From IMG/VR virus record IMGVR_UViG_3300044797_000098, positions 1 through 64,000 of that record: a stretch of DNA of 64,000 nucleotides; one strand, given 5' to 3'. A model generated the notes under the pieces. That model searched no databases. It saw only the letters and a list, made by a program, of their open reading frames with translations, and had not been told where the DNA came from. This document shows, one piece after another, positions 6 through 48,845 of this stretch. The position numbers were made by a program, and so were the translations under genes. Position 1 is the first letter of the stretch. Each line of letters begins with the position of its first letter.

Positions 6-1190
6 TTACCCCGACATAAATGTTCGGGGCTTGTTGCTCGTCCTGCGTTTAGCAGGATGTTGTTTTTGAACGGCAACAATAGGCTCATTGACAAGAGCCC
101 AAGATAGAACGGTTGTTATACCGTTCAAAAGATTGATTGCGGATACTGCACGGTTTTTGATATTGATTGAGGCATTGACGTCTGCGTTTGTGGCGAAGCC
201 ACATTGCAGGCAAAGAAAATCGCTCTGCGATTTTCGATTACCCTTTTCACAATGTCCGCAGTTGCTACACGTTCTGCTTGTATTACGAGGATCAACGAGT
301 GCTACTGGAACACCTGCTATCTGCGCCTTGTAAAGTATGAACTGCATCAGTTGATTGAATGCCCACTTACCGTGCTTGTCTCTATCCTTTTTTCTAACCG
401 TTTTCTTGAAAGATTGCAAATCTTCGATTGCAATTCCAACATTGTGCCTTTTCGCTTCCGAGACAACCCGTTTGCTTATGATATGATTCGTGTTTCTCTT
501 GAATTTTCCTTCCTTGTTAGATATTCGTTTGAGATGACGTTTTGCGGACTTCGTTCCGCGAGACTGTAATCGTTTGCGTAAATTATGATATCGTTGTCTG
601 ACTGTTTCTACTTCGTTGCCTACGAACTTGACACCGTTGTCCAGCGTGGCTAAATTGACAATACCAGAATCCATACCGATAAAATCGGTTGGCAGATATT
701 GTTCTGCTTCTGGAACTTCGACTACGGCTTGTAGAAAAAAATTACCATTATTGAAAACTAATGTAGCACCGTTTCTAATCTTTCTATTGTATAAGTTTGC
801 ATATGTTCCGAAAGCGATTGGTATCTTTTTCAATCTTCTATTGATAGAAGATATGGAAATCATATCAAGGTTCTTGCCGAAGGCAAGAACCCTTGCATCA
901 AAATCGATTGATGAGTGTTTTTGGAAACGATGTTGAACGGTCTTGTCGTTTTTATATGTTGCTGAAACGCGTGCTATTGCACGGATTACAAATTGAGATG
1001 GTAGAGATGGAAACTGTTTGCGAACTTGATGATAGATTGCCTTTTGCAGTTTGAATTTAGAAAAACAACGATTAGCAAAAGCATATTCCGAGATCGAATT
1101 ACAAGTAGAATTGAACACATACATCGTGTTCAATAACGATTGTTTTTCGTTTGCAGAAACTATTAGTTTGACTGGAACGGTTAGCAACAT
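6..1190 (-). CDS. tnpB: TnpB RNA-guided nuclease (IS200/IS605-type), copy 1
   Basis: 394 aa; RuvC motifs GMDSG, IEDL, NADVNA; CxxC-CxxC zinc finger (CSNCG...CLQCG); right-end hairpin overlaps the 3' end of the gene. Confidence 0.93.
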   Translation of the reverse strand: MLLTVPVKLIVSANEKQSLLNTMYVFNSTCNSISEYAFANRCFSKFKLQKAIYHQVRKQFPSLPSQFVIRAIARVSATYKNDKTVQHRFQKHSSIDFDARVLAFGKNLDMISISSINRRLKKIPIAFGTYANLYNRKIRNGATLVFNNGNFFLQAVVEVPEAEQYLPTDFIGMDSGIVNLATLDNGVKFVGNEVETVRQRYHNLRKRLQSRGTKSAKRHLKRISNKEGKFKRNTNHIISKRVVSEAKRHNVGIAIEDLQSFKKTVRKKDRDKHGKWAFNQLMQFILYKAQIAGVPVALVDPRNTSRTCSNCGHCEKGNRKSQSDFLCLQCGFATNADVNASINIKNRAVSAINLLNGITTVLSWALVNEPIVAVQKQHPAKRRTSNKPRTFMSG

Positions 1191-1488: not shown

Positions 1489-1562
1489 TGGAACCGGCGA
1501 GCAACGATCTCGCAACCTATCGGTTAAAAGCCGATTGCTACTGCCAATTGAGCTACGGTTCC
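1489..1562 (-). tRNA. tRNA-Lys(UUU), atypical D and T arms, no encoded CCA
   Basis: Acceptor stem GGAACCG/CGGTTCC; anticodon stem ATCGG/CCGAT with loop CTTTTAA; T stem GCGAG/CTCGC. Confidence 0.85.
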
Positions 1563-2033
1563 ATTCCCCCGAATAAGGCATCGGGAGAACCGCCACATAA
1601 CAACACGTCATTGTGGAACGTGTTGATACGACCTAATACTTATCCCTTCCCAACCAATACACCAGATTATCTTCCCTATGCAAACTCGTCCGCCACTTAA
1701 TCAATCTTGCAATCTGACCTTTGCTCATACCATCTCGGATGTGAAGTCCGAGATACTTTGCAAGACGGATTAGATTAGGAAGACTGGCTTTTTTGAGCGT
1801 GCTGACTTTCACTTGCTTCTTGTTTTGCTTCTGCTTTCCTTGCACCAACACAAGCATAGCATTCACACATACAACTTGCCGGACGCACGGCATAACAAGT
1901 GCAAAAATCTGCACCACAACCATAGAATTTGCGCTCCTTATCCGTGAGTTCATTCCAATCGAAACGTTCAAACACGAAGTCTTGAACGTATGCGTCGTAT
2001 GCAATCTCCGCAAGGGATTTTAGTTGCGGTTCT

Positions 2034-2599: not shown

Positions 2600-3844
2600 C
2601 GCAGGGATACCCTTGGCTTCAGTCAAGGGATGAACTGCGCTCCGTGAATTATTTTTGTGTTGCATACGATTTTTCTCAACTTTCTACTACTAATGATATA
2701 TATACTTACGATGCGAAGAACTTTTTCTTTCTATATGCTTGCTCCAAACGGATTTTTAGACTATCTAAAAACTTGTTCGGATATTTTTACTCGTCATGTG
2801 GAATGGGCATTTTCTAATAAATCTACTAATAAGGTTCAAGCACACAAAGACTTGTATCAAGTTATTCGTTCCGAATATCCAAACATACCTTCCAACATTT
2901 TACAAGCAACACGAGATCAAGCATTGGAAGCAGTTAGAAGATTGAAGTTCAAAATCAAACCTAAAAAGAAACCACATTCAGCGGTTAGATACGATGCCAG
3001 AACAATTACTCTTCGCGGTAATCTTTTGACTTTTTCGTGGTCAGGCAAACGAATTAGAACACTAATCAATTTACCACAACATTTTCAACAATACAAAAAT
3101 TGGAAGATGCAATCAGGAACTATTGGTTATGACAAGGTCAAAAAGCAACTAAAAATTAGCCTTATTTTTGAGGCACCAGATACGATACCTATTCAAAACT
3201 CAACAAGAATAGTAGGCGTAGATCGCGGATTATATAATATCGTCTCGTTGTCAGACGGTCAATTGTATAATGCGCGAACGGTAAGAAAAAAGAAACGCGA
3301 GTTTCTTTATACGAAACGACAACTCCAAGCAAAAGGCACTCGATCTGCTAAACGAAAACTAAAAGCAAGATCAGGTCGAGAAAAGCGGTTCAGCACGGAT
3401 ACCAATCATGTAATTAGTAAATGGTTAGTAAATCAGTCATATGATACATTCGTTTTTGAAGACTTGAAAAACATTAGCAAGCAACGCAAAGGCAAGGTAT
3501 TGAATGGATGGCTTTCTAACTGGACATTTTTTCAATTAGAACAATTCGTTTTGTATAAAGCATCAACATTAGGCAAACAGGTTGTCAAGGTAGATGCAAG
3601 ATATACAAGTCAAAAATGCTCTAATTGTGGAATTGTTGAAAAATCTAATCGCAATAAATCAAGATATTGTTGCAGTAAATGCGGATATATAGAACACGCT
3701 GATATCAATGCTGCAAAAAATATCAAGATGAATTATACTCTCTCGTTAGCAGTAATGAATAACGAGCAGGCACCAGTCAATGTGCCATATGTGTCGATAG
3801 CAATATTAGATACAAGCCCTTGCCTTTAGGCAAGGGTACTTGAC
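2600..3844 (+). mobile_element. Non-autonomous IS200/IS605-like element carrying tnpB only
   Basis: Left hairpin CGCAGGGATACCCTTGG...CAAGGGATGAACTGCG at 2600-2639; right end CCCTTGCC-TTTA-GGCAAGGG-TACTTGAC ending at 3844. Confidence 0.75.
2711..3829 (+). CDS. tnpB: TnpB RNA-guided nuclease, copy 2 (start reassigned to MRRTFSF at 2711)
   Basis: RuvC motifs GVDRG, FEDL, HADINA; zinc finger CSNCG...CSKCG; N-terminus parallels copy 3 (MQRTISI). Confidence 0.93.
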   Translation: MRRTFSFYMLAPNGFLDYLKTCSDIFTRHVEWAFSNKSTNKVQAHKDLYQVIRSEYPNIPSNILQATRDQALEAVRRLKFKIKPKKKPHSAVRYDARTITLRGNLLTFSWSGKRIRTLINLPQHFQQYKNWKMQSGTIGYDKVKKQLKISLIFEAPDTIPIQNSTRIVGVDRGLYNIVSLSDGQLYNARTVRKKKREFLYTKRQLQAKGTRSAKRKLKARSGREKRFSTDTNHVISKWLVNQSYDTFVFEDLKNISKQRKGKVLNGWLSNWTFFQLEQFVLYKASTLGKQVVKVDARYTSQKCSNCGIVEKSNRNKSRYCCSKCGYIEHADINAAKNIKMNYTLSLAVMNNEQAPVNVPYVSIAILDTSPCL

Positions 3845-12605: not shown

Positions 12606-14402
12606 CTATGCGACTTCCATAAGGGTTTCCTCATTGCGAGCACCCTCGGGGGTTTTGGCGTCGCCTGACCGCTCGCGCTCAAGTCCGCGGTCAAGGATAT
12701 TGTTTGATGCATTCTCATCTCGATCATGTTCAACACCACAACCTTGACAAAAATACTTCAACATACCTTTGATATCATCATTGTAATAATGACATATTCC
12801 GCATTCTTTTGAAGTGCCACGAGCATCAACTTCGATATATCCTTCTGTCTTTCCTCTGCTACGCAATGCGTTCTTACACGCATTACGAAACTCACTTGGT
12901 GCAGTCAGTTGCCTATTAGTGCTTCCAGCATTACCTCGTGCAAGGTTAGACAGATTGATGTCCTCGAAAACAATCGAACCGTATTGATCAGCAAGTTTTG
13001 CTGCCAACTTACGATACTCTTCGTTTCGATATCCAACTCCGCGATTGCGTTGCGAAGAAGCCCACTGCCATAGATGGTGATCATGATATCTCCATCCCGC
13101 AATACCAGTTCCTTTTGTTAGTGTTTTCGTTTCTTTATTCCACGAACCACTAATACCATAAATCTCTTCATCTCCCGCAAAACGATTGGTTGACCATTGT
13201 TTCACCAATCTTGCAAGACGACCTTGCGATCTCCACTTATCCAAGTGTTCACATTCTTTCGTGAGCCATTCGGGCAAGTTTTCTTTTCCAGTCATCCATT
13301 CAACTAATGATTTACGAACAGCATCGAACTCCTTATCTCGAATGCTTTCGATTTCGTTAGCCTTTGATAGTGCTGCAATGACACTTGATGGGACACGAAT
13401 ATCCCATTCCTTATTATCAGTTCCTTTACCATATCCAATGCGAACCGATCCGTCTTGCATATCGCGCCAACCAAGATCAATACCAACGCACGATTGATTG
13501 TTGTGTGCAATTGTATTTTGATTGTCATTGAACGTAATAGACACCGTCCAATGTTCTCGTGCTCCAATCTTATTGCAACATACCTGTACAACCTGAATAA
13601 CGCTTCCAGTAGGAATATCACGATGATATACCATTGGAAACTCTGCCCAGATAGGCTTACGATCATTGTCGGTTCCAATACGGAGACGGAACAATCGCAA
13701 GTCTTTCTTACCAACCTTACGCATCGTTCCATCTACCTTTACAATTGGAGCAGGCATAGGAATGATCCGAACCATCTTGCTTGATGCTTCAATGCCAATG
13801 ACCTTATCAATAGGTTCATTGGGTTGAAACTGCTGAATACCAACACGACCTTCACCAAGATATGAACGGAAACGAGGATCATTCGGTTCAACACCATCAT
13901 ACAATGGCATCTTACGAGTTTTCTGAAACGCATCCTCAATCAACATATACGTTCCATACCACGGAGCAATATCACTCTTGCGAACCTCTGCAATCTTTAG
14001 GTTCGCTTGCTGATCAATAGCAGTTCGTTTTGCTTTGATATCCTCATTGCTACGAAGCAATCTGCGTGCTTCAATAAGTTTCGAGTTGATTTCTTTGCGA
14101 GCCTTCTTTGCATCCCTCAGTTCTTGCTTCATCTCATCGGTTGCAACGCGAGTGCGAGCATCCGCATTAGCTCGTTTGTTCCTCTTGTCGAACGCAATAA
14201 CCTTATCATCCGCTTCCTTTACTGCGACTTCCAGTTCAGGAATATCACCTGCTTGTCGTTCAATGGTTCGGATTTCATTTCTCCTCCATCGTTCAATCTC
14301 AATAAGTTTGTTTTGGTAATTGTGTCCCTTTCTAATCTGCTCCATAACAAGATCATGGTTCAGTGTGGGTGCCAGAAGTCCTAACTTGAAGGTGCGTGTC
14401 AT
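12606..14402 (-). CDS. cas12m: Compact type V CRISPR effector, Cas12m-like (subtype V-M / V-U1)
   Basis: 598 aa next to the array; long coiled-coil REC insertion, WYGTY and GEGRVGIQ segments, RuvC-I GIDLGWR, KWRSQGRL, RuvC-II VFEDINL, TAPSEFR, zinc finger, RuvC-III DRDENA; collinear with the Cas12m proteins as I recall them. Confidence 0.8.
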   Translation of the reverse strand: MTRTFKLGLLAPTLNHDLVMEQIRKGHNYQNKLIEIERWRRNEIRTIERQAGDIPELEVAVKEADDKVIAFDKRNKRANADARTRVATDEMKQELRDAKKARKEINSKLIEARRLLRSNEDIKAKRTAIDQQANLKIAEVRKSDIAPWYGTYMLIEDAFQKTRKMPLYDGVEPNDPRFRSYLGEGRVGIQQFQPNEPIDKVIGIEASSKMVRIIPMPAPIVKVDGTMRKVGKKDLRLFRLRIGTDNDRKPIWAEFPMVYHRDIPTGSVIQVVQVCCNKIGAREHWTVSITFNDNQNTIAHNNQSCVGIDLGWRDMQDGSVRIGYGKGTDNKEWDIRVPSSVIAALSKANEIESIRDKEFDAVRKSLVEWMTGKENLPEWLTKECEHLDKWRSQGRLARLVKQWSTNRFAGDEEIYGISGSWNKETKTLTKGTGIAGWRYHDHHLWQWASSQRNRGVGYRNEEYRKLAAKLADQYGSIVFEDINLSNLARGNAGSTNRQLTAPSEFRNACKNALRSRGKTEGYIEVDARGTSKECGICHYYNDDIKGMLKYFCQGCGVEHDRDENASNNILDRGLERERSGDAKTPEGARNEETLMEVA

Positions 14403-36155: not shown

Positions 36156-37364
36156 ATGCAACGAACGATCTCTATCAAAATTGACGCACCAGCAGAGTTT
36201 TTAGATTACCTAAAAGCTTGCAACGAGCTATACAGCAGGTATGTTGAATGGTGTTTCGAGACCAAGAGCTACAATAAGAATAAATCTCATACCGAGCTAT
36301 ATGAAAAGTTTCGTCAGGAGTTTCCAAGTATCAATTCTGCCACCATTCAGTGTATTAGAGATAATGCACTTGAAAGCGTCAAGGCATTGAAATTCAAATT
36401 CAAGCCGAAAAAGAAGCCACATTCTCATATTCGTTTTGATAAGAGAACGATCGCTCTTCGAGGTGATCAACTATCGTTTGCATGGTCAGGTGATCGTATC
36501 AAACAGATCATAAAGATACCAGAGTTTTTCAAAAAACGATATGGATCTTGGAAGTTTCAGGCAGCAACAATAGGCTATAATAAGCATAAGAAGCAATTCG
36601 TTGCTAATCTGATTTTTCAATCAACTGCTCCGCAGGAGCTTCGCTCTTCTGCTCCGCAGGAGCTTCGCTCTTCTGCTCCGCAGGAGCTTCGCTCTTCTTC
36701 ACCTGAAAAGAAAGGTGATCGTGTAGTTGGTATCGATCGTGGACTGTATAACATAGTGTCTCTATCTGATGGTTTCAAGTATGCTTCCAATCAGGTCAGA
36801 AAAGTGAAACGAGAAGTCTTGTTTCTCAAAAAGCAACTTCAAACAAAAGGCACCCATAGTGCTAAACGCAAATTGAAAGCGTTGTCTTGCTATGAGAAGC
36901 GGTTTAGTTTGAATGTCAATCATATCATCAGTAAATTGTTAGTTTCGTTGCCATACGATATTTTTGTTCTCGAAGACTTGAAAGGTATTCGTAAGCAAAA
37001 ATCAAAAGGCAAACGACTAAACAAGTGGCTTGCTAACTGGTCATTTTGGCAATTAGAGGCTCTTCTGGGATATAAGGCAGAGATATTTTGCAAGCAAATT
37101 GTCAAAGTCGATGCTCGATATACCAGTCAAAAGTGCTGCAATTGCGGTCAAGTAGAAAAAGCCAATCGTGATGGCTCACATTACCACTGTGAGCGTTGTG
37201 GATTTAGGTGTCATTCGGATACGAATGCTGCTAAAAATATCCGCAATAACTATCTCATCTCTGCTGCTGAAAAACAGAAGGCAGAGCAGGCTATGTGTCA
37301 ATTAGCCGAATGCTTCGTATCGAAAGATACAGAAACAAGCCCCGTTGCTTTTAGCACGGGGTAA
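36156..37364 (+). CDS. tnpB: TnpB RNA-guided nuclease, copy 3, with a 3x APQELRSS insertion
   Basis: GIDRG, LEDL, HSDTNA RuvC motifs and zinc finger; right end CAAGCCCCGTTGCTTTTAGCACGGGGTAATTGA. Confidence 0.93.
   Translation: MQRTISIKIDAPAEFLDYLKACNELYSRYVEWCFETKSYNKNKSHTELYEKFRQEFPSINSATIQCIRDNALESVKALKFKFKPKKKPHSHIRFDKRTIALRGDQLSFAWSGDRIKQIIKIPEFFKKRYGSWKFQAATIGYNKHKKQFVANLIFQSTAPQELRSSAPQELRSSAPQELRSSSPEKKGDRVVGIDRGLYNIVSLSDGFKYASNQVRKVKREVLFLKKQLQTKGTHSAKRKLKALSCYEKRFSLNVNHIISKLLVSLPYDIFVLEDLKGIRKQKSKGKRLNKWLANWSFWQLEALLGYKAEIFCKQIVKVDARYTSQKCCNCGQVEKANRDGSHYHCERCGFRCHSDTNAAKNIRNNYLISAAEKQKAEQAMCQLAECFVSKDTETSPVAFSTG
36625..36696. repeat. Three tandem copies of the 24-nt hairpin element
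   Basis: (CTGCTCCGCAGGAGCTTCGCTCTT)x3. Confidence 0.95.
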
Positions 37365-43519: not shown

Positions 43520-43825
43520 TCACGCATCGGAATCGAGGTCGAGCACTTCCACGGCCTTCTTGGCGGTCTTCTCCGACTTCGGAGCATACCCACGCAGGAA
43601 GTTGCTGTTTCCCGACTTGCCCCCACCAACTACGGGCGTTAAGGTTTTTCCTTCCGCCTTGAAGTTAGTGGTACCCTCGGGCAGACTTGACGACATCGTG
43701 GCGACAAGCTCGCCCATCTCCGTACCAATGGCGTCGATCTCCGACTCCAATTCAGCTCGGCGATCGGCAAGCGACTTGTAAGCATTGAACGCGGTCTTAA
43801 GGGCAATGACGTTGACAGTAGACAT
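43520..43825 (-). CDS. Coiled-coil hypothetical protein (start MSTVNV), downstream of a hammerhead
   Basis: Paralog of 10520..10795. Confidence 0.65.
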   Translation of the reverse strand: MSTVNVIALKTAFNAYKSLADRRAELESEIDAIGTEMGELVATMSSSLPEGTTNFKAEGKTLTPVVGGGKSGNSNFLRGYAPKSEKTAKKAVEVLDLDSDA

Positions 43826-43865
43826 GTGTGTATCCAACTTTCTTGTATGACGTTTCAAGACAACT

Positions 43866-43929
43866 GGTCTCATCAGGACGTGAATTATTACACGTCTACG
43901 CATATGCTTTTGACATATGCGTTTCGACC
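43866..43929 (-). ncRNA. Hammerhead ribozyme, type II (HHR-1)
   Basis: GGUC-GAAA-CGCAUAUG..CAUAUGCG-UA|GACGUG..CACGUC-CUGAUGA-GACC: complete core and three stems. Confidence 0.92.
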
Positions 43930-43972: not shown

Positions 43973-44374
43973 TTAGATGGCTCGCGAACGATACCGTCCG
44001 CACGCAACGTTATCCCACAACTTCTCCACCTTCACACCATAAGCGCCATTGCCGGTATTGTGTCTAGAAAGCAATGACACAATGTAGTTAGGCGAGTATC
44101 TTCCAGCGAAGTGTTTGATTAGATCTTGCGGAGTGGTATAACTGATACCCTGGCTTTCACGTGCACACATGAAAGCGTGCATCTCCTTCTCAACTGCCTT
44201 AGGAGGACTCATGTCAGAGACGTTCACATTCGGAAACGTTTCCTCCTGTTCTACCACATTAGCCACCGACACCTTACTCGTGCCAATACTCTGGATGAAG
44301 GTACGAGCAAGATCCTTATGCCCACCACTGAGGAGAAGAGTAAGAATCTGTAGGTTTGCGTCGTTGAGATTCAT
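43973..44374 (-). CDS. Hypothetical protein, possibly winged-helix
   Basis: 133 aa; C-terminus TTPQDL...YIVSLLSR...GRY. Confidence 0.5.
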   Translation of the reverse strand: MNLNDANLQILTLLLSGGHKDLARTFIQSIGTSKVSVANVVEQEETFPNVNVSDMSPPKAVEKEMHAFMCARESQGISYTTPQDLIKHFAGRYSPNYIVSLLSRHNTGNGAYGVKVEKLWDNVACGRYRSRAI

Positions 44375-44467: not shown

Positions 44468-45542
44468 CTTTCCCTTACAGCGTATGCGTATACCTTCCAA
44501 CATCCTTCACATACTCACTAATCGTATACGCACGCACATTGCTTTCGCCTAACTCCTTTGTCCAGAAACTGATTACCTTATCCAAGGTATGACCACTGTT
44601 GTCATGAACGGTGCTATTCAGCACCGAATGTGCTCCGTTCTCCTCAACATCACACACAAGCGTATGATGGCATCCGTTGAACCGATCCCAATATATCGTC
44701 GCTACTGTTCGCATATGATATCCTCTTCTCCCACAATGTCGTATGACTCGATTATGTCGTTATCAGATAGAGCAAACGCAACGGCGTCTCTCCAATCTGC
44801 AACTACGGAATCCTCCTTCACTTTCGCATCTTGTAAGTTTAGGAGCCTAAGATGCAACAACATCATATCAGATGCTACATCCTGCGCTTTCTCCCACGCT
44901 TCCAACGTTCGCTTACAAGGGTTCTCCTTGTAGGTTTGCATGTATGCTTGCACGCGAAGCCTGCTTACTTCCAAGGCTTCAAGCGTCGTTTGACCCGTGT
45001 GTAGTGTGATAGCATTCATTGGCTCACCAGCCAATAGCAGAGAAACAACCAGCCACCCCATGCACACACATGAGGCGCGTAGTATGCAATCTTGGAATAC
45101 ATTGTGATCCTTTCGGGCAATGACTGAATTACCCAACAATATCCTACACATACGTATGCATAGGATATTAGTAGATACGTCAGTTCTTACTTACACCGTC
45201 TCCCAGCGCACATCCTTGACCCTCTGTTGTAGGCTGGTATCGTACATGTACGCCTCTTCGTCTTGGCTCCAATCGGTCAATTGTAGGAGACGTGGAAGAG
45301 CTTTGCGCGCTTGTGCGAGCTTGGGATACTGCTTATCAATACTCCTACCCGACATGACGTGTGTGATGGCATACCCCGGCTTATTGAACGCGCGGGTTAT
45401 GATGAGATGTCGCATCTTGGAGTACCGTGTGGTCTTTTCCCACACGAATTCCCCGCTGTCGGACTTCTCGTTAGTGATCACGGTAAAGGTGAGAGGGCGT
45501 CGTTTCATGTAGGTTTCTCCGTGTTGTGCATTCGTTGTGCAT

Positions 45543-45648
45543 GGTCTCATCAAGCGAGACTTACAGTCTCGCCCAATGCCTACCTTTCGGTAGTCATCAG
45601 TTAGGGCATAACCCTAATACATACAGGGACTTACCTGTATGTTTCGAC
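45543..45648 (-). ncRNA. Hammerhead ribozyme, type II, interrupted by a 47-nt insert (HHR-2)
   Basis: GGUC-GAAA-CAUACAGG..CCUGUAUG-UA|UUAGGG..CCCUAA-CUGAUGA-[insert]-UGAUGA-GACC. Confidence 0.7.
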
Positions 45649-45662
45649 CTTGTCTTGTAGTA

Positions 45663-46211
45663 TTAGAGCGTGACGGGGATGGTAATGTGCGACACCGCCT
45701 TCCGTGCGATTGACCGACCGTCAATCTTGAACCCTAGATCCTGTAGTTTTTTCACCTGCACGGCAGTATTGCTCGTTTCGAGAATACCTTGTAGGTCATT
45801 CACCGACACCTTGATACTCGAATCGAAGGCACCCATACGCGCCTTCAAGCTCGCAGAAAGACCGTCATACTCCGCCTTTTCCTTACGAAGTGCAATGATG
45901 TGGGTTTCGAGCACAACGTTGAGTGCTTGTCGCACCTTCTGCTCGGCTTCATTCTTCGCGCGTTGCTGTACCGTTGCAAGTGCGTTGATTGCCCGCACAC
46001 ACACCGTCCCGATGTCGTCGAATGTAAGCTTGTCGAACGATGGGTTAAGATTGCCACCTTTCCCCGCATCCCAGCACAAGGCATGCAATGCGCGGAAGTG
46101 TGCGGTAATCTCCGCGATCTGCTCACCGTTGAACTGTTTCGGCGCTTTCTTTTCTTCCTTTTCGGCAGAGGGAACGACAGTGGCAACCGTGGTGGTATTG
46201 TTCGTGGTCAT
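45663..46211 (-). CDS. Hypothetical helical protein (likely start MTTNNT)
   Basis: GGAG RBS before MTT; coiled-coil composition. Confidence 0.65.
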   Translation of the reverse strand: MTTNNTTTVATVVPSAEKEEKKAPKQFNGEQIAEITAHFRALHALCWDAGKGGNLNPSFDKLTFDDIGTVCVRAINALATVQQRAKNEAEQKVRQALNVVLETHIIALRKEKAEYDGLSASLKARMGAFDSSIKVSVNDLQGILETSNTAVQVKKLQDLGFKIDGRSIARKAVSHITIPVTL

Positions 46212-46500
46212 GTGAGTGTATCTCCTATGTTGTGTTGTTTGACTTTCGAGCTTATTGCCCGACAATGTATGCAAGACTATGATCTTACACACATTAGCAG
46301 ACACTCAAGCCTTACAGGATGAAGTTCTTTTCAGTGTATTCTTTCGTCTTAGCTCGTTTCCCGCTAAGTCTCTTGGTAGCCTTGCTGCTCATTCCTACCC
46401 TATGCGTCATATGGTAGCGGATATCCCGTATCTGCTTACTTGTGAGCGTTTTGCACTTATCGCATAGACAATTGCTTGATTGTAGGATTAGACACTTCAT

Positions 46501-46629
46501 TCATCCACCCTTGTGCAGCCATCGGCTACTTGTAAACGTATGCCGTAGTTTCTTGCTCGGGCGCACACCACCTTTCCAGTGTGCTACATGTGCTCTCTTG
46601 AAGGTTAGCCGTTTCTTCTTTATCACCAT
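46501..46629 (-). CDS. 42-aa basic peptide (not in ORF track)
   Basis: MVIKKKRLTFKRAHVAHWKGGVRPSKKLRHTFTSSRWLHKGG; SD GAGGAG 7 nt upstream; stop abuts the next ATG. Confidence 0.55.
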   Translation of the reverse strand: MVIKKKRLTFKRAHVAHWKGGVRPSKKLRHTFTSSRWLHKGG

Positions 46630-46633
46630 TCCC

Positions 46634-46695
46634 GATCTCCTCAGTGTGCGCCTAACGCACATACCGCCCTAACAGTGTTAGGAGCGGTTTCGATC
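46634..46695 (-). ncRNA. Hammerhead ribozyme, type II (HHR-3)
   Basis: GAUC-GAAA-CCGC..GCGG-UA|UGUGCG..CGCACA-CUGAGGA-GAUC. Confidence 0.88.
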
Positions 46696-46869
46696 TTGCC
46701 GACATTGTTAGCGTCTAGCCGGTATAGGCTACTTGTGATAGCCGTATGGTATAGTATTAGATTGTGGTATTATCTGCTTTCTTTGCACTCGCGCCTAGCG
46801 TTTCTTACTTCCCTATCTCGTCGCGCTTTGGCTTACAATATCACTTTCCGCTATCAGAGCCGATAATGT

Positions 46870-47328
46870 AGTCTAGTTGCTTCCCTTGGGAATACAACGA
46901 CAACATTGTGGCATAAGCGGGGACCATGTAAGACAATCGCCGAACCGTAGAATTAACCTTCTAGGTGCGATATGTCGTATCGTTAGAATAGAGACTGTCT
47001 ACTAGGTACACTTCCGATATTAGCGACTTTGCCTTACCTATCTTACCTACAGCGACTAGACCTTACAAGGTCATACCCCAAGGGGTATTGGTCGGCACTG
47101 TAGCGGGATAAGGCTTTCAGACTGCTTGCCAGTCTTCGCCCTGCTAAAACGGGTATTCCGTCGTATGCTCTACCTTAGGCGACATGTGGCAGACCCACAC
47201 CGTTCTAAGGTTTCTAACGCTAGTGTAGGAGCTACCTACTTGTTCCGTTTCCCCACTAGCTACTGCGGGGTGCTATCTAGAGAGAACGGCGGGCGGTTGA
47301 ATTACTTTAGGCCTCGCGGGGCTTTTTT
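46870..47328 (+). ncRNA. Candidate structured non-coding RNA
   Basis: Nested stems ending in a perfect Y junction (47031-47114), further hairpins, and a terminator-like end. Confidence 0.45.
47311..47328 (+). terminator. Putative intrinsic terminator
   Basis: GCCTCGCGGGGC followed by TTTTTT. Confidence 0.45.
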
Positions 47329-47419
47329 CTTCGCCCCTACCGTTCCGCTCTCGACAGATAGACTATATTGCAGACGTTGTGCCATGGCATATGGATCGGA
47401 TAAGTATATGATATTATTG

Positions 47420-48470
47420 ATGTAGGGAAAAGACTTAGTATGATCTTGCTGTCTCGGTTTTAAGAAAAACCAATGAGATCATAACGTTGGACGATCATAG
47501 GGTATGCAAAGATTGCGGTGTGATAATGTGGGATAGTGTTGCTTCGGTCTAGGAAGCGTTCGGAGCGCTCGGGATATCTCGGCAAGGGTAGCAGGGGGAA
47601 AACGCTTCCTAGCTGGCACCTAGCGCCAGCAAACGGCAATGCTCGAAGGCAGGGTGCGGGCGCTCGACGTTGGCTGGAATGTAGTTGCTGGTAGGGAGCT
47701 CCGTCAGGATGTAGTACAATGTAGGGAAAGGTGGGTGGTTCCGTTCTTGCAATGATGCACAAGTTATGCCAAGTCGACGGCTCGTTTCTTGCAATAGGTT
47801 CAGGTGGGATAACGGAATACATACGATACAGACTTCCCTACATACTGAACGGTTGGCACTGGCTGAACCGTTGAACGTATAGTGTAGGGTGAGCAGTGTC
47901 GTATGTAGGAGATCAGTGGATGATGTAGTATGATTGTTGCGAGGTCAAGTATAGGTCAAGTGCTTATCACGTATTGGTCAACAACAACTCACTGATAACG
48001 CAATGTAGGATAACAGGAGAGATGTAGCCGTCTCAACACCATTGGATTACCTGAACAAGATGTAGGAGAATAGGGAGAAAGGTAGGTAGAGGTAGGGAGG
48101 AATTACAGCGATACGGTTGGCACGGTTCTTGGGGGTTGGCGGGAAAGGTAGCCAGAGGTGGGATGAATGCTGACAGGGGAAAGGTGGGATGATGTGAGAT
48201 GTTCAGGTGGTGTGATGTAGGGGAGACGGGGAGATGTGGCAGCTTGGTGCCTAGTGTAGGGGGAACGCAGGGCGTATAGCCGGAGTAGCGGGTTGGAAGA
48301 CAATGTATGATATGTAGTGAAAAGAAAGGAAATGTAGTGGAATGTAGAATGATGTAATAGTTGTAAAGAAGTGGAATGAAATGGAGGGAAAGGTGGGAGA
48401 CGGTGGGAGGAATGGAGGGGATGTGGTGAGGTATCGCGTAAGGTGTGGCGGTGTGGGGTAATGTGGGCCT
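47420..48470. other. Purine/G-skewed non-coding tract at the GC-content junction
   Basis: 50 of 60 bases are purines at 48361-48420; 11 co-oriented GTAGG. Confidence 0.7.
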
Positions 48471-48845
48471 CGTTAAATAATAGAACGGTACCAAAACGAA
48501 TCAATACAATACTATCAAACGGTAGCAAACAATATAAAACAAAATAATCTGAATACAACATCAAACAATAGCAACAATTAATAATAACCAATAAAACGGT
48601 TGTAATAAATATAACAACTACATCAATAACAATAGTTTATCTAATCGTTCCTCTGTTATATCCTCTGGCAATAAATAATCAAGAAATACACTAGGCTTGT
48701 CATCATCAGCATATTCAATAAGGGTTGATTTACTATCAATAAACGATGTAATGCAACTATCGAATTCAGCAACTGCGATTGAATCATTATATAATATATC
48801 CTGTACTATATGTAATGGTATATTAGTTAAATATATCTTTATCAA

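What the first reader, a model, noticed from the sequence alone, without database searches (positions are those of the whole stretch)
46501..46700. Hammerhead whose catalytic core doubles as the Shine-Dalgarno of the first gene
Seen in sequence: the core here is CUGAGGA (G at the free position 7) followed by stem II GAUC. This spells GAGGAG 7 nt before the ATG (46629) of a 42-aa basic peptide missed by the ORF track. Inference: the folded ribozyme hides the RBS, and self-cleavage with release of the 5' fragment would expose it. That is a natural version of the engineered ribozyme-gated translation switches, placed at the head of the early operon.
Basis: partly seen in the sequence, partly recalled or inferred. 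Interest (0 to 1): 0.78.

Follow-up and report, generated by a model that had tools for sequence, protein, structure and literature searches.

The report
Phage hammerhead ribozyme overlapping a ribosome-binding site
A genuine self-cleaving hammerhead RNA in a giant peat-soil phage sits between a long folded non-coding RNA and a real 42-codon gene; its core spells that gene's ribosome-binding site, but only in this one phage, so a translation switch is possible but unproven.

Summary
On the minus strand, 46695..46634 is a canonical type II hammerhead in which stem II is the open helix. Core CUGAGGA plus G10.1 spells GAGGAG (46642..46637), 7 nt before the AUG at 46629. The 42-aa ORF is a real gene (dN/dS 0.11-0.15).

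- **G7 is not conserved.** It is unique among 15 family members; the closest relatives have A7 or C7 and carry their own SD in or next to the 3' tail.
- **No masking by base pairing.** Predicted SD accessibility is the same before and after cleavage, so any masking would have to be tertiary.
- **No sensor domain** was found.

This looks like a known kind of element: phage intercistronic type II hammerheads that cut long transcripts (Perreault 2011). The window, part of a 406-kb phage record, has three of them, all on one strand within 2.8 kb.

What is new is the context. HH1 lies at the 3' edge of a conserved, covarying structured RNA of about 740 nt that is absent from Rfam. A fourth lineage has a terminator-like hairpin and an SD-sequestering hairpin in place of the ribozyme.

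Best reading: constitutive processing that separates this RNA from the small-gene mRNA, with an RBS compacted into the core in this lineage. No cleavage data could be obtained.

The parts
46634..46695 (-). HH1, a type II hammerhead ribozyme (stem II open). Predicted cleavage between 46662 (A17) and 46661 (U1.1).
   Evidence: Descriptor search. CM R1 68 bits. The MFE of the 62-nt element is the hammerhead fold, -25.3 kcal/mol. Covariation across 15 members.
46637..46642 (-). GAGGAG, made of G5 A6 G7 G8 A9 G10.1. It is the Shine-Dalgarno-like hexamer embedded in the catalytic core and the first pair of stem II.
   Evidence: Sequence. Best anti-SD duplex -9.2 kcal/mol, spacing 6-7 to the AUG. G7 is unique to this genome.
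46501..46629 (-). ORF-A, a 42-aa basic protein (MVIKKKRLTFKRAH...). An alternative GUG start at 46626 aligns with the starts used in relatives.
   Evidence: Conserved in 4 lineages; dN/dS 0.11-0.15; variable sites by codon position 5/8/19. No called homologue in the protein database.
46312..46500 (-). ORF-B, a 62-aa protein with a CxCxxC motif. Its AUG directly follows the ORF-A stop codon (UGA-AUG), which suggests translational coupling.
   Evidence: dN/dS 0.10-0.21. Two called homologues, P0001 and P0002. No Pfam or PHROG match.
45663..46211 (-). 182-aa gene of unknown function with its own SD (UAGGAGAU). It is the last gene of the HH1-to-HH3 block.
   Evidence: Homologues in L001, L003, L018 and L019.
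46696..47400 (-). Conserved structured non-coding RNA. It runs from about 47400 to the cleavage site, about 740 nt, so HH1 cleavage would make its 3' end.
   Evidence: No conserved ORF. 4-lineage RNAalifold gives 183 pairs, 34 of them with compensatory changes. Energy is -171 against -81.6 +/- 6.5 for column shuffles, and the minus strand is favoured. No Rfam family.
47408..47416 (-). UAAUAUCAU, which is TGATATCAT in three relatives. This conserved extended -10-like box is a candidate promoter for the RNA/operon transcript.
   Evidence: Alignment columns conserved in all 4 lineages. Function is inferred only.
45589..45649 (-). HH3, a third hammerhead-like motif 13 nt after the stop of the 182-aa gene. 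Core and stems I and III are canonical. Stem II is imperfect (C insertion, U.C at 10.1/11.1). A second UUGAUGA-GACC at 45553..45543 would complete a GGUC/GACC stem II.
   Evidence: CM R1 38 bits, E about 7e-8. Pattern hit. Absent from L001 and L003. Activity uncertain.
43866..43929 (-). HH2, a type II hammerhead with core CUGAUGA and stem II GGUC/GACC. It lies in the 147-nt gap between the 133-aa gene (stop at 43973) and a 101-aa gene (AUG at 43825).
   Evidence: Descriptor search. CM R1 45 bits although not in the training set. Sequence.

Best explanation
HH1 is an active, constitutive type II hammerhead, one of three that punctuate a long minus-strand transcript of this jumbo phage. It cuts between A46662 and U46661.

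Upstream product: a structured non-coding RNA of about 740 nt that ends in the stem III hairpin with a 2',3'-cyclic phosphate.

Downstream product: an mRNA for ORF-A, ORF-B and the 182-aa protein. It starts with a 5'-OH and the stem I hairpin, followed two nucleotides later by the SD GAGGAG and the AUG.

Only a 4-bp stem II joins the two products, so they separate at once and the catalytic core falls apart.

In this family the ribosome-binding site always abuts the ribozyme. In this one lineage it has been compacted into the core: G at the free position 7, together with loss of the tail GGAG. Ribozyme folding and 30S binding are therefore mutually exclusive on a single molecule, so translation of ORF-A follows cleavage or unfolding. 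This is a processing step, not a regulated switch.

Shown: motif, covariation, gene reality, positions, non-conservation of G7.
Inferred: cleavage in vivo, use of GAGGAG as the SD, the order of events, and the stability effects of the 5'-OH and hairpin ends.
For: - **Canonical core and helices with strong covariation**. CM E about 5e-16.
- **Three hammerheads, one strand, 2.8 kb.** There are none elsewhere in the 406 kb.
- **Consistent placement in the family.** Members in other contigs sit in very short gaps, from the stop codon of the upstream gene to the SD and start of the next. There are up to three per 1.6 kb.
- **Published precedent.** Perreault 2011 (PMC3088659) showed that such prophage arrays cleave in vitro and proposed processing of polycistronic phage RNA.
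- **The upstream RNA is real.** It is conserved and covaries.
- **The junction is a module.** Lineage L018 keeps the RNA and ORF-A but has a terminator-like hairpin where the ribozyme would be, so the junction marks a discrete RNA end.
- **ORF-A and ORF-B are under purifying selection**.
- **GAGGAG is the best SD for ORF-A**.
- **Window and L003 are nearly identical here.** From 46760 to 46487 they differ only at 46704, at N7 and in a 10-nt patch at the RBS and first codons. G7 therefore co-occurs with loss of the tail GGAG.
- **Stem II is weak as a duplex,** -1.8 kcal/mol.
Against: - There is no experimental or read-end evidence of cleavage. The only RNA run holds four short contigs and no ends.
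- Rfam hammerhead models do not reach threshold.
- The loop I to 3'-tail pseudoknot usual in type II hammerheads is not evident. Fast cleavage at physiological Mg is therefore not assured.
- The link between G7 and the lost tail SD rests on a single evolutionary event.
- The host and its anti-SD sequence are unknown.
Confidence: 0.6

Rival explanations
1. The selected function of HH1 is to gate translation. The folded ribozyme masks the SD, and ORF-A is made only after self-cleavage releases the 5' fragment, as a natural counterpart of engineered ribozyme-RBS switches.
For: - Five of the six SD nucleotides are core residues that make tertiary contacts in the active fold (established hammerhead structure), and the sixth is paired in stem II.
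- After cleavage only 4 bp hold the 5' fragment.
- The hammerhead-less lineage L018 has a very stable hairpin that pairs the ORF-A SD with a CU-rich strand (z = -5.6). RBS occlusion at this junction may therefore be a recurring theme.
- In several other family members the only purine tract before the start lies in G8-A9-stem II (L015a, L015b, L016b).
- Self-cleavage-dependent translation is documented in RNA viruses of fungi and plants (PMC13725137).
Against: - G7 is found in 1 of 15 members.
- The nearest relatives keep the ribozyme and ORF-A but place the SD in or straddling the tail.
- Predicted base-pairing accessibility of the SD is the same before and after cleavage.
- There is no ligand-sensing or other regulatory domain.
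- A fast constitutive ribozyme would leave almost no uncleaved pool to gate.
Confidence: 0.2
2. Coincidence. N7 is a free position and happens to be G, which automatically spells GAGGAG. ORF-A starts at the conserved GUG (46626) or the AUG using a weak or other initiation signal, and the overlap has no functional meaning.
For: - N7 varies freely (U, A, C, G) in the family.
- The start codons of the relatives align with the window GUG, not its AUG.
- Some family members have only weak SD-like tracts (-3.5 to -5 kcal/mol) yet precede real ORFs.
Against: - The window lineage has lost the tail GGAG that L003 has. Its only other purine run (GGGA) abuts the AUG directly.
- All window-versus-L003 differences in 274 nt cluster at N7 and the RBS patch.
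- Other genes of the operon use clear GGAG-type SDs.
Confidence: 0.15
3. HH1 is an inactive relic. It is a hammerhead-shaped sequence conserved only because it is part of the structured upstream RNA or of the mRNA leader.
For: - No recognisable stem I to stem II tertiary contact or pseudoknot.
- Rfam models fail.
- HH3 in the same operon looks damaged.
Against: - Every catalytic nucleotide is intact in three lineages that differ by 6-24% in the surrounding region.
- Stem II changes compensatorily from GAUC/GAUC to GAGU/GCUC.
- The same ribozyme type recurs in unrelated gene contexts with full covariation.
Confidence: 0.05

Closest known systems
Type II hammerhead ribozymes of bacteria and prophages (Perreault et al. 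2011, PMC3088659; Rfam RF02276)
   Same: Same permuted architecture: stems I and III capped, stem II open. Same invariant core. Same habitat: phage intergenic regions, several per operon, flanking single genes or short gene blocks. Same proposed role in cutting long phage transcripts.
   Different: The Rfam model does not detect this subfamily. Stem II is always exactly 4 bp. The common pseudoknot between loop I and the 3' tail is not evident. In HH1 the SD of the next gene lies inside the core, and the upstream partner is a large structured RNA rather than a gene.
HHphage hammerhead variant of haloviruses HF1/HF2 (discussed in PMC3088659)
   Same: A hammerhead a few nucleotides (13 nt) upstream of the start codon of the first gene of an early polycistronic viral transcript. 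The mapped transcript 5' end lies at the cleavage site, and a regulatory role was proposed.
   Different: An archaeal virus with a variant core and a high-Mg requirement. No SD overlap is described.
Engineered ribozyme insulators and ribozyme/aptazyme RBS switches, e.g. RiboJ and hammerhead aptazymes that sequester an RBS (from my own knowledge, not checked here)
   Same: A self-cleaving hammerhead placed directly before an RBS. Cleavage removes the upstream RNA and leaves a defined 5'-OH leader.
   Different: In the engineered switches the RBS is base-paired inside a ribozyme stem, and cleavage is usually ligand-controlled. Here the SD lies in the formally unpaired core, no base-pair masking is predicted, and no sensor exists.
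Hammerhead-interspersed vrRNA arrays of phage VIPR systems (bioRxiv 10.64898/2026.04.26.720920)
   Same: Phage-encoded hammerheads that release discrete non-coding RNAs from a longer transcript.
   Different: No GGYNN tandem repeats exist anywhere in this genome. The upstream RNA is about 740 nt and highly base-paired, whereas vrRNAs are about 100 nt.
Self-cleaving ribozymes used for translation initiation by RNA viruses of fungi and plants (PMC13725137)
   Same: Ribozyme cleavage in a 5' UTR is required for, or promotes, translation of the downstream ORF.
   Different: That system is eukaryotic cap-independent translation in RNA viruses with type I hammerheads. No SD is involved.

Membership tests
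Hammerhead ribozyme | Invariant core: C3 U4 G5 A6 N7 G8 A9, G12 A13 A14, the A15.1-U16.1 pair, and H17 not G | tested here: met
   CUGAGGA at 46644..46638, GAA at 46691..46689, A46688-U46663, H17 = A46662.
Hammerhead ribozyme | Three helices (I, II, III) radiating from the core, supported by covariation, with a G10.1-C11.1 pair | tested here: met
   Across 15 members, 98% of cells are paired and 13 of 17 pairs show compensatory change. None of 500 shuffles reached the observed percentage paired or covariation score. G10.1-C11.1 is present in 12 of 15. RNAalifold recovers the junction unaided.
Hammerhead ribozyme | Tertiary contact between stems I and II (loop-loop, or a pseudoknot from loop I to the 3' tail in type II) needed for fast cleavage | tested here: inconclusive
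   No conserved complement to loop I in the 3' tails. Loop I GUUAG could pair with CUAAC (46711..46707) in an upstream hairpin loop. That pairing is kept in L003 and weakened in L001.
Hammerhead ribozyme | Site-specific self-cleavage giving 2',3'-cyclic phosphate and 5'-OH ends | not testable with these tools
   The only RNA run is stored as contigs and holds four short pieces with no end information.
Rfam Hammerhead_II (RF02276) and Hammerhead_3 (RF00008) | Score at or above the curated gathering threshold | tested here: not met
   RF02276 gives no hit at E <= 10 in the whole record. RF00008 gives 14.5 bits against a 48.5 cut-off, in a wrong register. The family definition rests on core and helices, so this lowers 'member of the Rfam seed clade', not 'is a hammerhead'.
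Ribozyme-gated translation switch | RBS sequestered in the uncleaved fold and exposed after cleavage | tested here: inconclusive
   Base-pair accessibility of GAGGAG is 0.65-0.71 both before and after cleavage. Only tertiary masking by the core remains possible, and it cannot be modelled here.
Ribozyme-gated translation switch | The arrangement (SD inside the ribozyme) is conserved in relatives | tested here: not met
   N7 is G in 1 of 15 members. L003 and L001 keep the ribozyme and ORF-A with A7 or C7 and an SD in or straddling the tail.
Ribozyme-gated translation switch | A signal-sensing element that controls cleavage | tested here: not met
   The element is a minimal 62-nt hammerhead. No riboswitch or aptamer family is found nearby.
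Shine-Dalgarno-led start | Purine tract complementary to the 16S 3' end, 5-10 nt before a start codon of a real gene | tested here: met
   GAGGAG, -9.2 kcal/mol against a generic anti-SD, spacing 7 to AUG 46629. ORF-A is under purifying selection. The host 16S is unknown.

The most novel reading that the evidence does not exclude
HH1 is a coupling device. One self-cleavage event matures a previously undescribed, highly structured phage RNA of about 740 nt. By dismantling the catalytic core that contains the SD, the same event licenses translation of two tiny basic proteins encoded immediately downstream, which could be that RNA's protein partners. The hammerhead-less lineage achieves the same logic with a terminator-like hairpin and an SD-sequestering hairpin.
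Probability: 0.15. Interest if true: 0.75.

Novelty: new member of a known kind. Interest (0 to 1): 0.45.

Why it matters
Type II hammerheads between phage genes have been known since 2011, but their purpose is still unsettled.

This locus offers a clean natural test case. The ribosome-binding site lies inside the catalytic core, so ribozyme folding and ribosome binding must compete, and the ribozyme can be inactivated on the 5' fragment without touching the SD.

It also marks the 3' edge of a large, well-supported structured RNA with no Rfam family, in a 406-kb phage from peat. Large structured RNAs of unknown function are rare and sought after.

Finally, this hammerhead subfamily, with a 4-bp open stem II and no pseudoknot, escapes the current Rfam models. 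Phage hammerheads are therefore probably under-counted.

Tried and rejected
- **Rfam.** Gathering and permissive scans gave no hammerhead above threshold. The single weak type III register (14.5 bits) needs a non-pairing stem III and stem II, so I rejected it in favour of the type II fold.
- **Upstream in-frame AUG at 46662 (A17-U1.1-G1.2).** It gives a 53-aa ORF, but it is out of frame in L003 and would be split by cleavage. Rejected.
- **Loop I to 3'-tail pseudoknot.** No consistent complement was found.
- **VIPR vrRNA array.** No GGYNN runs and no 5-nt periodicity. Rejected.
- **Replication origin at the C-rich repeats.** The cumulative skew minimum at 47 kb is only local; the skew follows gene orientation genome-wide. 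Rejected.
- **Prophage in a host contig.** This was my first reading of the GC shift. It is wrong: the record is a virus record, and relatives are collinear across the shift.
- **Read-level evidence for cleavage.** One metatranscriptome held only four short contigs. Inconclusive.
- **Phage database blastn** found no match.
- **Function of ORF-A, ORF-B and neighbours.** Protein database, Pfam, PHROGs and Atlas gave nothing.
- **Probable chance or non-hammerhead hits.** L006, L007, L011 and L014 from the metagenome pattern scan lack GAAA and stem II. The CM hit at window 1957..2019 (17.9 bits) lacks the CUGANGA core.
- **Excluded from CM training.** I left L015b, L016a and HH2 out of the training alignment because MAFFT misaligned their stem III. 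All three were then recovered by the model.

Full report
**Where the window lies.** The window is the first 64 kb of a single 406,470-bp virus record. The record is linear, CheckV 95% complete, and comes from a peat metagenome. Almost all of its genes are on the minus strand. GC content is 43-49% up to about 48.6 kb and about 30-35% beyond. Two IMG/VR contigs (L001, 133 kb; L003, 102 kb) and an ENA contig (L018) are collinear with the window across that shift. Both parts therefore belong to one phage genome, not to a prophage in a host.

**The observation.** The finding is on the minus strand. Read 5' to 3', 46695..46634 is:
- GAUC, the stem II 5' strand;
- GAA;
- a stem III hairpin of 26 nt that opens with A15.1-U16.1 and C15.2-G16.2;
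- A17;
- the stem I hairpin UGUGCG-UUAGG-CGCACA;
- CUGAGGA;
- GAUC, the stem II 3' strand.

This is a complete hammerhead in the type II permutation, with stem II open. Predicted cleavage is between A46662 and U46661. GAGGAG (46642..46637) consists of G5 A6 G7 G8 A9 G10.1. Seven nucleotides later comes the AUG at 46629, which opens a 42-codon ORF ending at 46501.

**More than chance.** My descriptor found only this element and a second one (43929..43866) in the whole 406 kb. I then built a covariance model from nine relatives.
- It scores HH1 at 68 bits.
- It recovers the second element (HH2, 45 bits), which was not in the training set.
- It reveals a third (HH3, 45649..45589, 38 bits).

A loose pattern search finds exactly these three in the record, all on the minus strand, against one hit for the reversed control. 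Over 15 family members, 98% of pair cells are standard pairs and 13 of 17 pairs show compensatory changes. None of 500 shuffles reached the observed percentage paired or covariation score, and slid partners collapse to 22-53% paired. The 62-nt element folds by itself into the hammerhead secondary structure (-25.3 kcal/mol). RNAalifold recovers the three-way junction unaided.

Rfam does not see the element. RF02276 gives nothing, and RF00008 gives 14.5 bits in a register whose stems do not pair. The subfamily has a 4-bp open stem II and lacks the loop I to 3'-tail pseudoknot that Perreault et al. describe as usual for type II.

**The ORF is real.** ORF-A is conserved in four lineages: window, L003, L001 and L018. 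Its dN/dS is 0.11-0.15, and variable sites fall 5/8/19 by codon position. Its stop codon is immediately followed by the AUG of a second small gene, ORF-B (62 aa; dN/dS 0.10-0.21). A 182-aa gene with its own SD comes next. None of these has a Pfam, PHROG or informative Atlas match, and ORF-A has no called homologue in the protein database.

**Is the SD-in-core arrangement conserved?** It is not. The homologous ribozyme differs in the two closest relatives:
- L003 has CUGAAGA, followed by its own GGAG and a GUG start.
- L001 has CUGACGA, with stem II changed compensatorily to GAGU/GCUC, followed by AGGG and an AUG.

Among the 15 family members N7 is U seven times, A four times, C three times and G once. 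Scoring 25 nt upstream of each start against a generic anti-SD gives three groups:
- the best site lies in the 3' tail in L004, L008a, L008b and L010;
- it straddles stem II in L003 and L001;
- it lies inside the ribozyme in window HH1 (-9.2 kcal/mol, the strongest of this group), with only weak tracts in L015a, L015b and L016b.

The RBS therefore always abuts the ribozyme, with starts 3-22 nt after stem II. Only here is a canonical SD built from the core.

Between 46760 and 46487 the window and L003 differ only at 46704, at N7 and in a 10-nt patch at the RBS and first codons. G7 therefore co-occurs with loss of the tail GGAG. This suggests compensation, but it is a single event.

**Does the fold hide the SD?** At the level of base pairing it does not. 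The mean probability that GAGGAG is unpaired is 0.65-0.71 in precursors of 161-901 nt and 0.69-0.71 in 3' products of 102-162 nt. A longer 3' product even lowers it. In the hammerhead secondary structure C3-A9 are formally unpaired. Masking could come only from the tertiary core, where established crystal structures show G5, A6, G8 and A9 engaged and N7 free. These tools cannot model that.

What can be said is that an active fold and an SD:anti-SD duplex cannot coexist on one molecule. After cleavage the 5' product is held by a 4-bp helix worth only -1.8 kcal/mol as a duplex, so the core falls apart. No aptamer or other sensor is present.

**Context changes the picture.** Upstream of HH1 there is no ORF for about 1.9 kb. 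The 740 nt directly upstream (about 47400..46696) are 76-94% identical in relatives and carry many compensatory hairpin changes.
- With four lineages RNAalifold predicts 183 pairs, 34 of them with double changes.
- Column shuffles give -81.6 +/- 6.5 kcal/mol against -171.1 observed, and at most 17 such pairs.
- Slid partners give 2-4 such pairs.
- The opposite strand folds worse and needs twice as many G-U cells.

No Rfam family matches. A box conserved in all four lineages (TGATATCAT; TAATATCAT in the window, 47416..47408) looks like an extended -10 element. It would place the 5' end near 47400 (inference). HH1 therefore sits at the junction of a large structured RNA and the first small gene.

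In lineage L018 the RNA, ORF-A and ORF-B are kept but there is no hammerhead. In its place are a terminator-like hairpin followed by a CU-rich run, and a very stable hairpin that pairs that run with the ORF-A SD (z = -5.6). The junction is thus a module that defines an RNA end and possibly controls the ORF-A RBS, built in two different ways.

**The other two hammerheads.** HH3 lies 13 nt after the stop of the 182-aa gene, and HH2 lies between a 133-aa and a 101-aa gene. Together with HH1 they would cut the transcript into four parts: the structured RNA, then ORF-A/ORF-B/gp182, then a block of three or four genes, then the rest. HH3 has a perfect core and perfect stems I and III, but a damaged stem II. 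A second UUGAUGA-GACC lies 47 nt downstream, as if an insertion or duplication had split the element. It is absent from L001 and L003.

Unrelated contigs carry the same ribozyme type two or three times per 1.3-2.8 kb, wedged between a stop codon and the next SD. This matches what Perreault et al. reported for prophages. They found hammerheads flanking single genes or short blocks, showed the arrays active in vitro on about 2-kb transcripts, and proposed that they process polycistronic phage RNA. It also matches their halovirus HHphage, which lies 13 nt before the first early gene.

**Expression data.** One peat metatranscriptome, stored as contigs, holds four short pieces identical to the window: 43691-43830, 45411-45599, 46900-47090 (the deepest, inside the structured RNA) and 48077-48254. 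There is no end information, and DNA carry-over cannot be excluded. This neither supports nor refutes cleavage.

**Verdict.** The motif, the SD overlap and the ORF are all real. The ribozyme belongs to a known kind, the phage intercistronic type II hammerhead. The core-embedded SD is a lineage-specific compaction. It makes folding and ribosome binding mutually exclusive, but it is not shown, and not conserved, as a switch. The more novel feature is the neighbouring structured RNA of about 740 nt whose 3' end HH1 would make.

Noticed in passing
window 46696..47400 (minus strand): A conserved RNA of about 740 nt with no ORF and strong covariation (34 compensatory pairs in 4 lineages; z about -14 against column shuffles). 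It matches no Rfam family. HH1 cleavage would make its 3' end. This is a candidate new large structured phage RNA.
   Followed up: partly
window 47420..48500 (minus strand): A C-rich, G-poor non-coding stretch with eight copies of a YCYCCTACAY motif, about 20 of which occur in the remaining 405 kb. It is partly conserved in L001 and L018. An RNA-library contig covers 48077..48254. Function unknown; the origin-of-replication idea was not supported by GC skew.
   Followed up: partly
window about 48600: A sharp GC shift (about 47% to about 30%) inside one phage genome, with relatives collinear across it. The 48.6-kb higher-GC arm carries four OrfB_IS605/Cas12f1-like TNB (transposon-type) genes, an Eco57I-type methylase and a ResIII helicase.
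   Followed up: partly
window 45543..45649 (minus strand): HH3 has a canonical core and stems I and III, but the stem II 3' strand is displaced. A GNRA-capped hairpin and a second stem-I-like hairpin plus UUGAUGA-GACC follow. It looks like a hammerhead split by an insertion or duplication, and it is absent in L001 and L003.
   Followed up: partly
L018 1640..1725: The lineage without the hammerhead has a terminator-like hairpin plus a long hairpin that sequesters the ORF-A SD (GAAGGGAAGGGAG) with a CU-rich strand. This may be an alternative-pairing control element.
   Followed up: partly
L008 516..1517; L015 427..1742; L016 15..601: Metagenome contigs carry two or three hammerheads of the same subfamily in 0.6-1.3 kb, each between a stop codon and the next SD. 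Stem I is nearly identical (UGUGCG/CGCACA) across unrelated gene contexts, which suggests a mobile or recurrently copied cassette.
   Followed up: partly
whole record; Rfam RF02276: The Rfam type II hammerhead model gives no hit for any of the three hammerheads here, even at E <= 10. This subfamily (4-bp open stem II, no pseudoknot) is invisible to standard annotation.
   Followed up: yes
window 6..1190, 2657..3829, 12606..14402, 36156..37364: Four genes with the Cas12f1-like TNB domain, three of them also with OrfB_IS605. This is unusually many for 48 kb of phage DNA. Their guide RNAs were not looked for.
   Followed up: no
window 1489..1562 (minus strand): A tRNA gene (Rfam 53.7 bits). The isotype was not determined.
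   Followed up: no
window 46707..46711 and 46652..46656 (minus strand): The loop of a small hairpin just upstream of HH1 reads CUAAC, which is complementary to loop I GUUAG. This could be a kissing contact replacing the usual pseudoknot. It is identical in L003 and weakened in L001.
   Followed up: no
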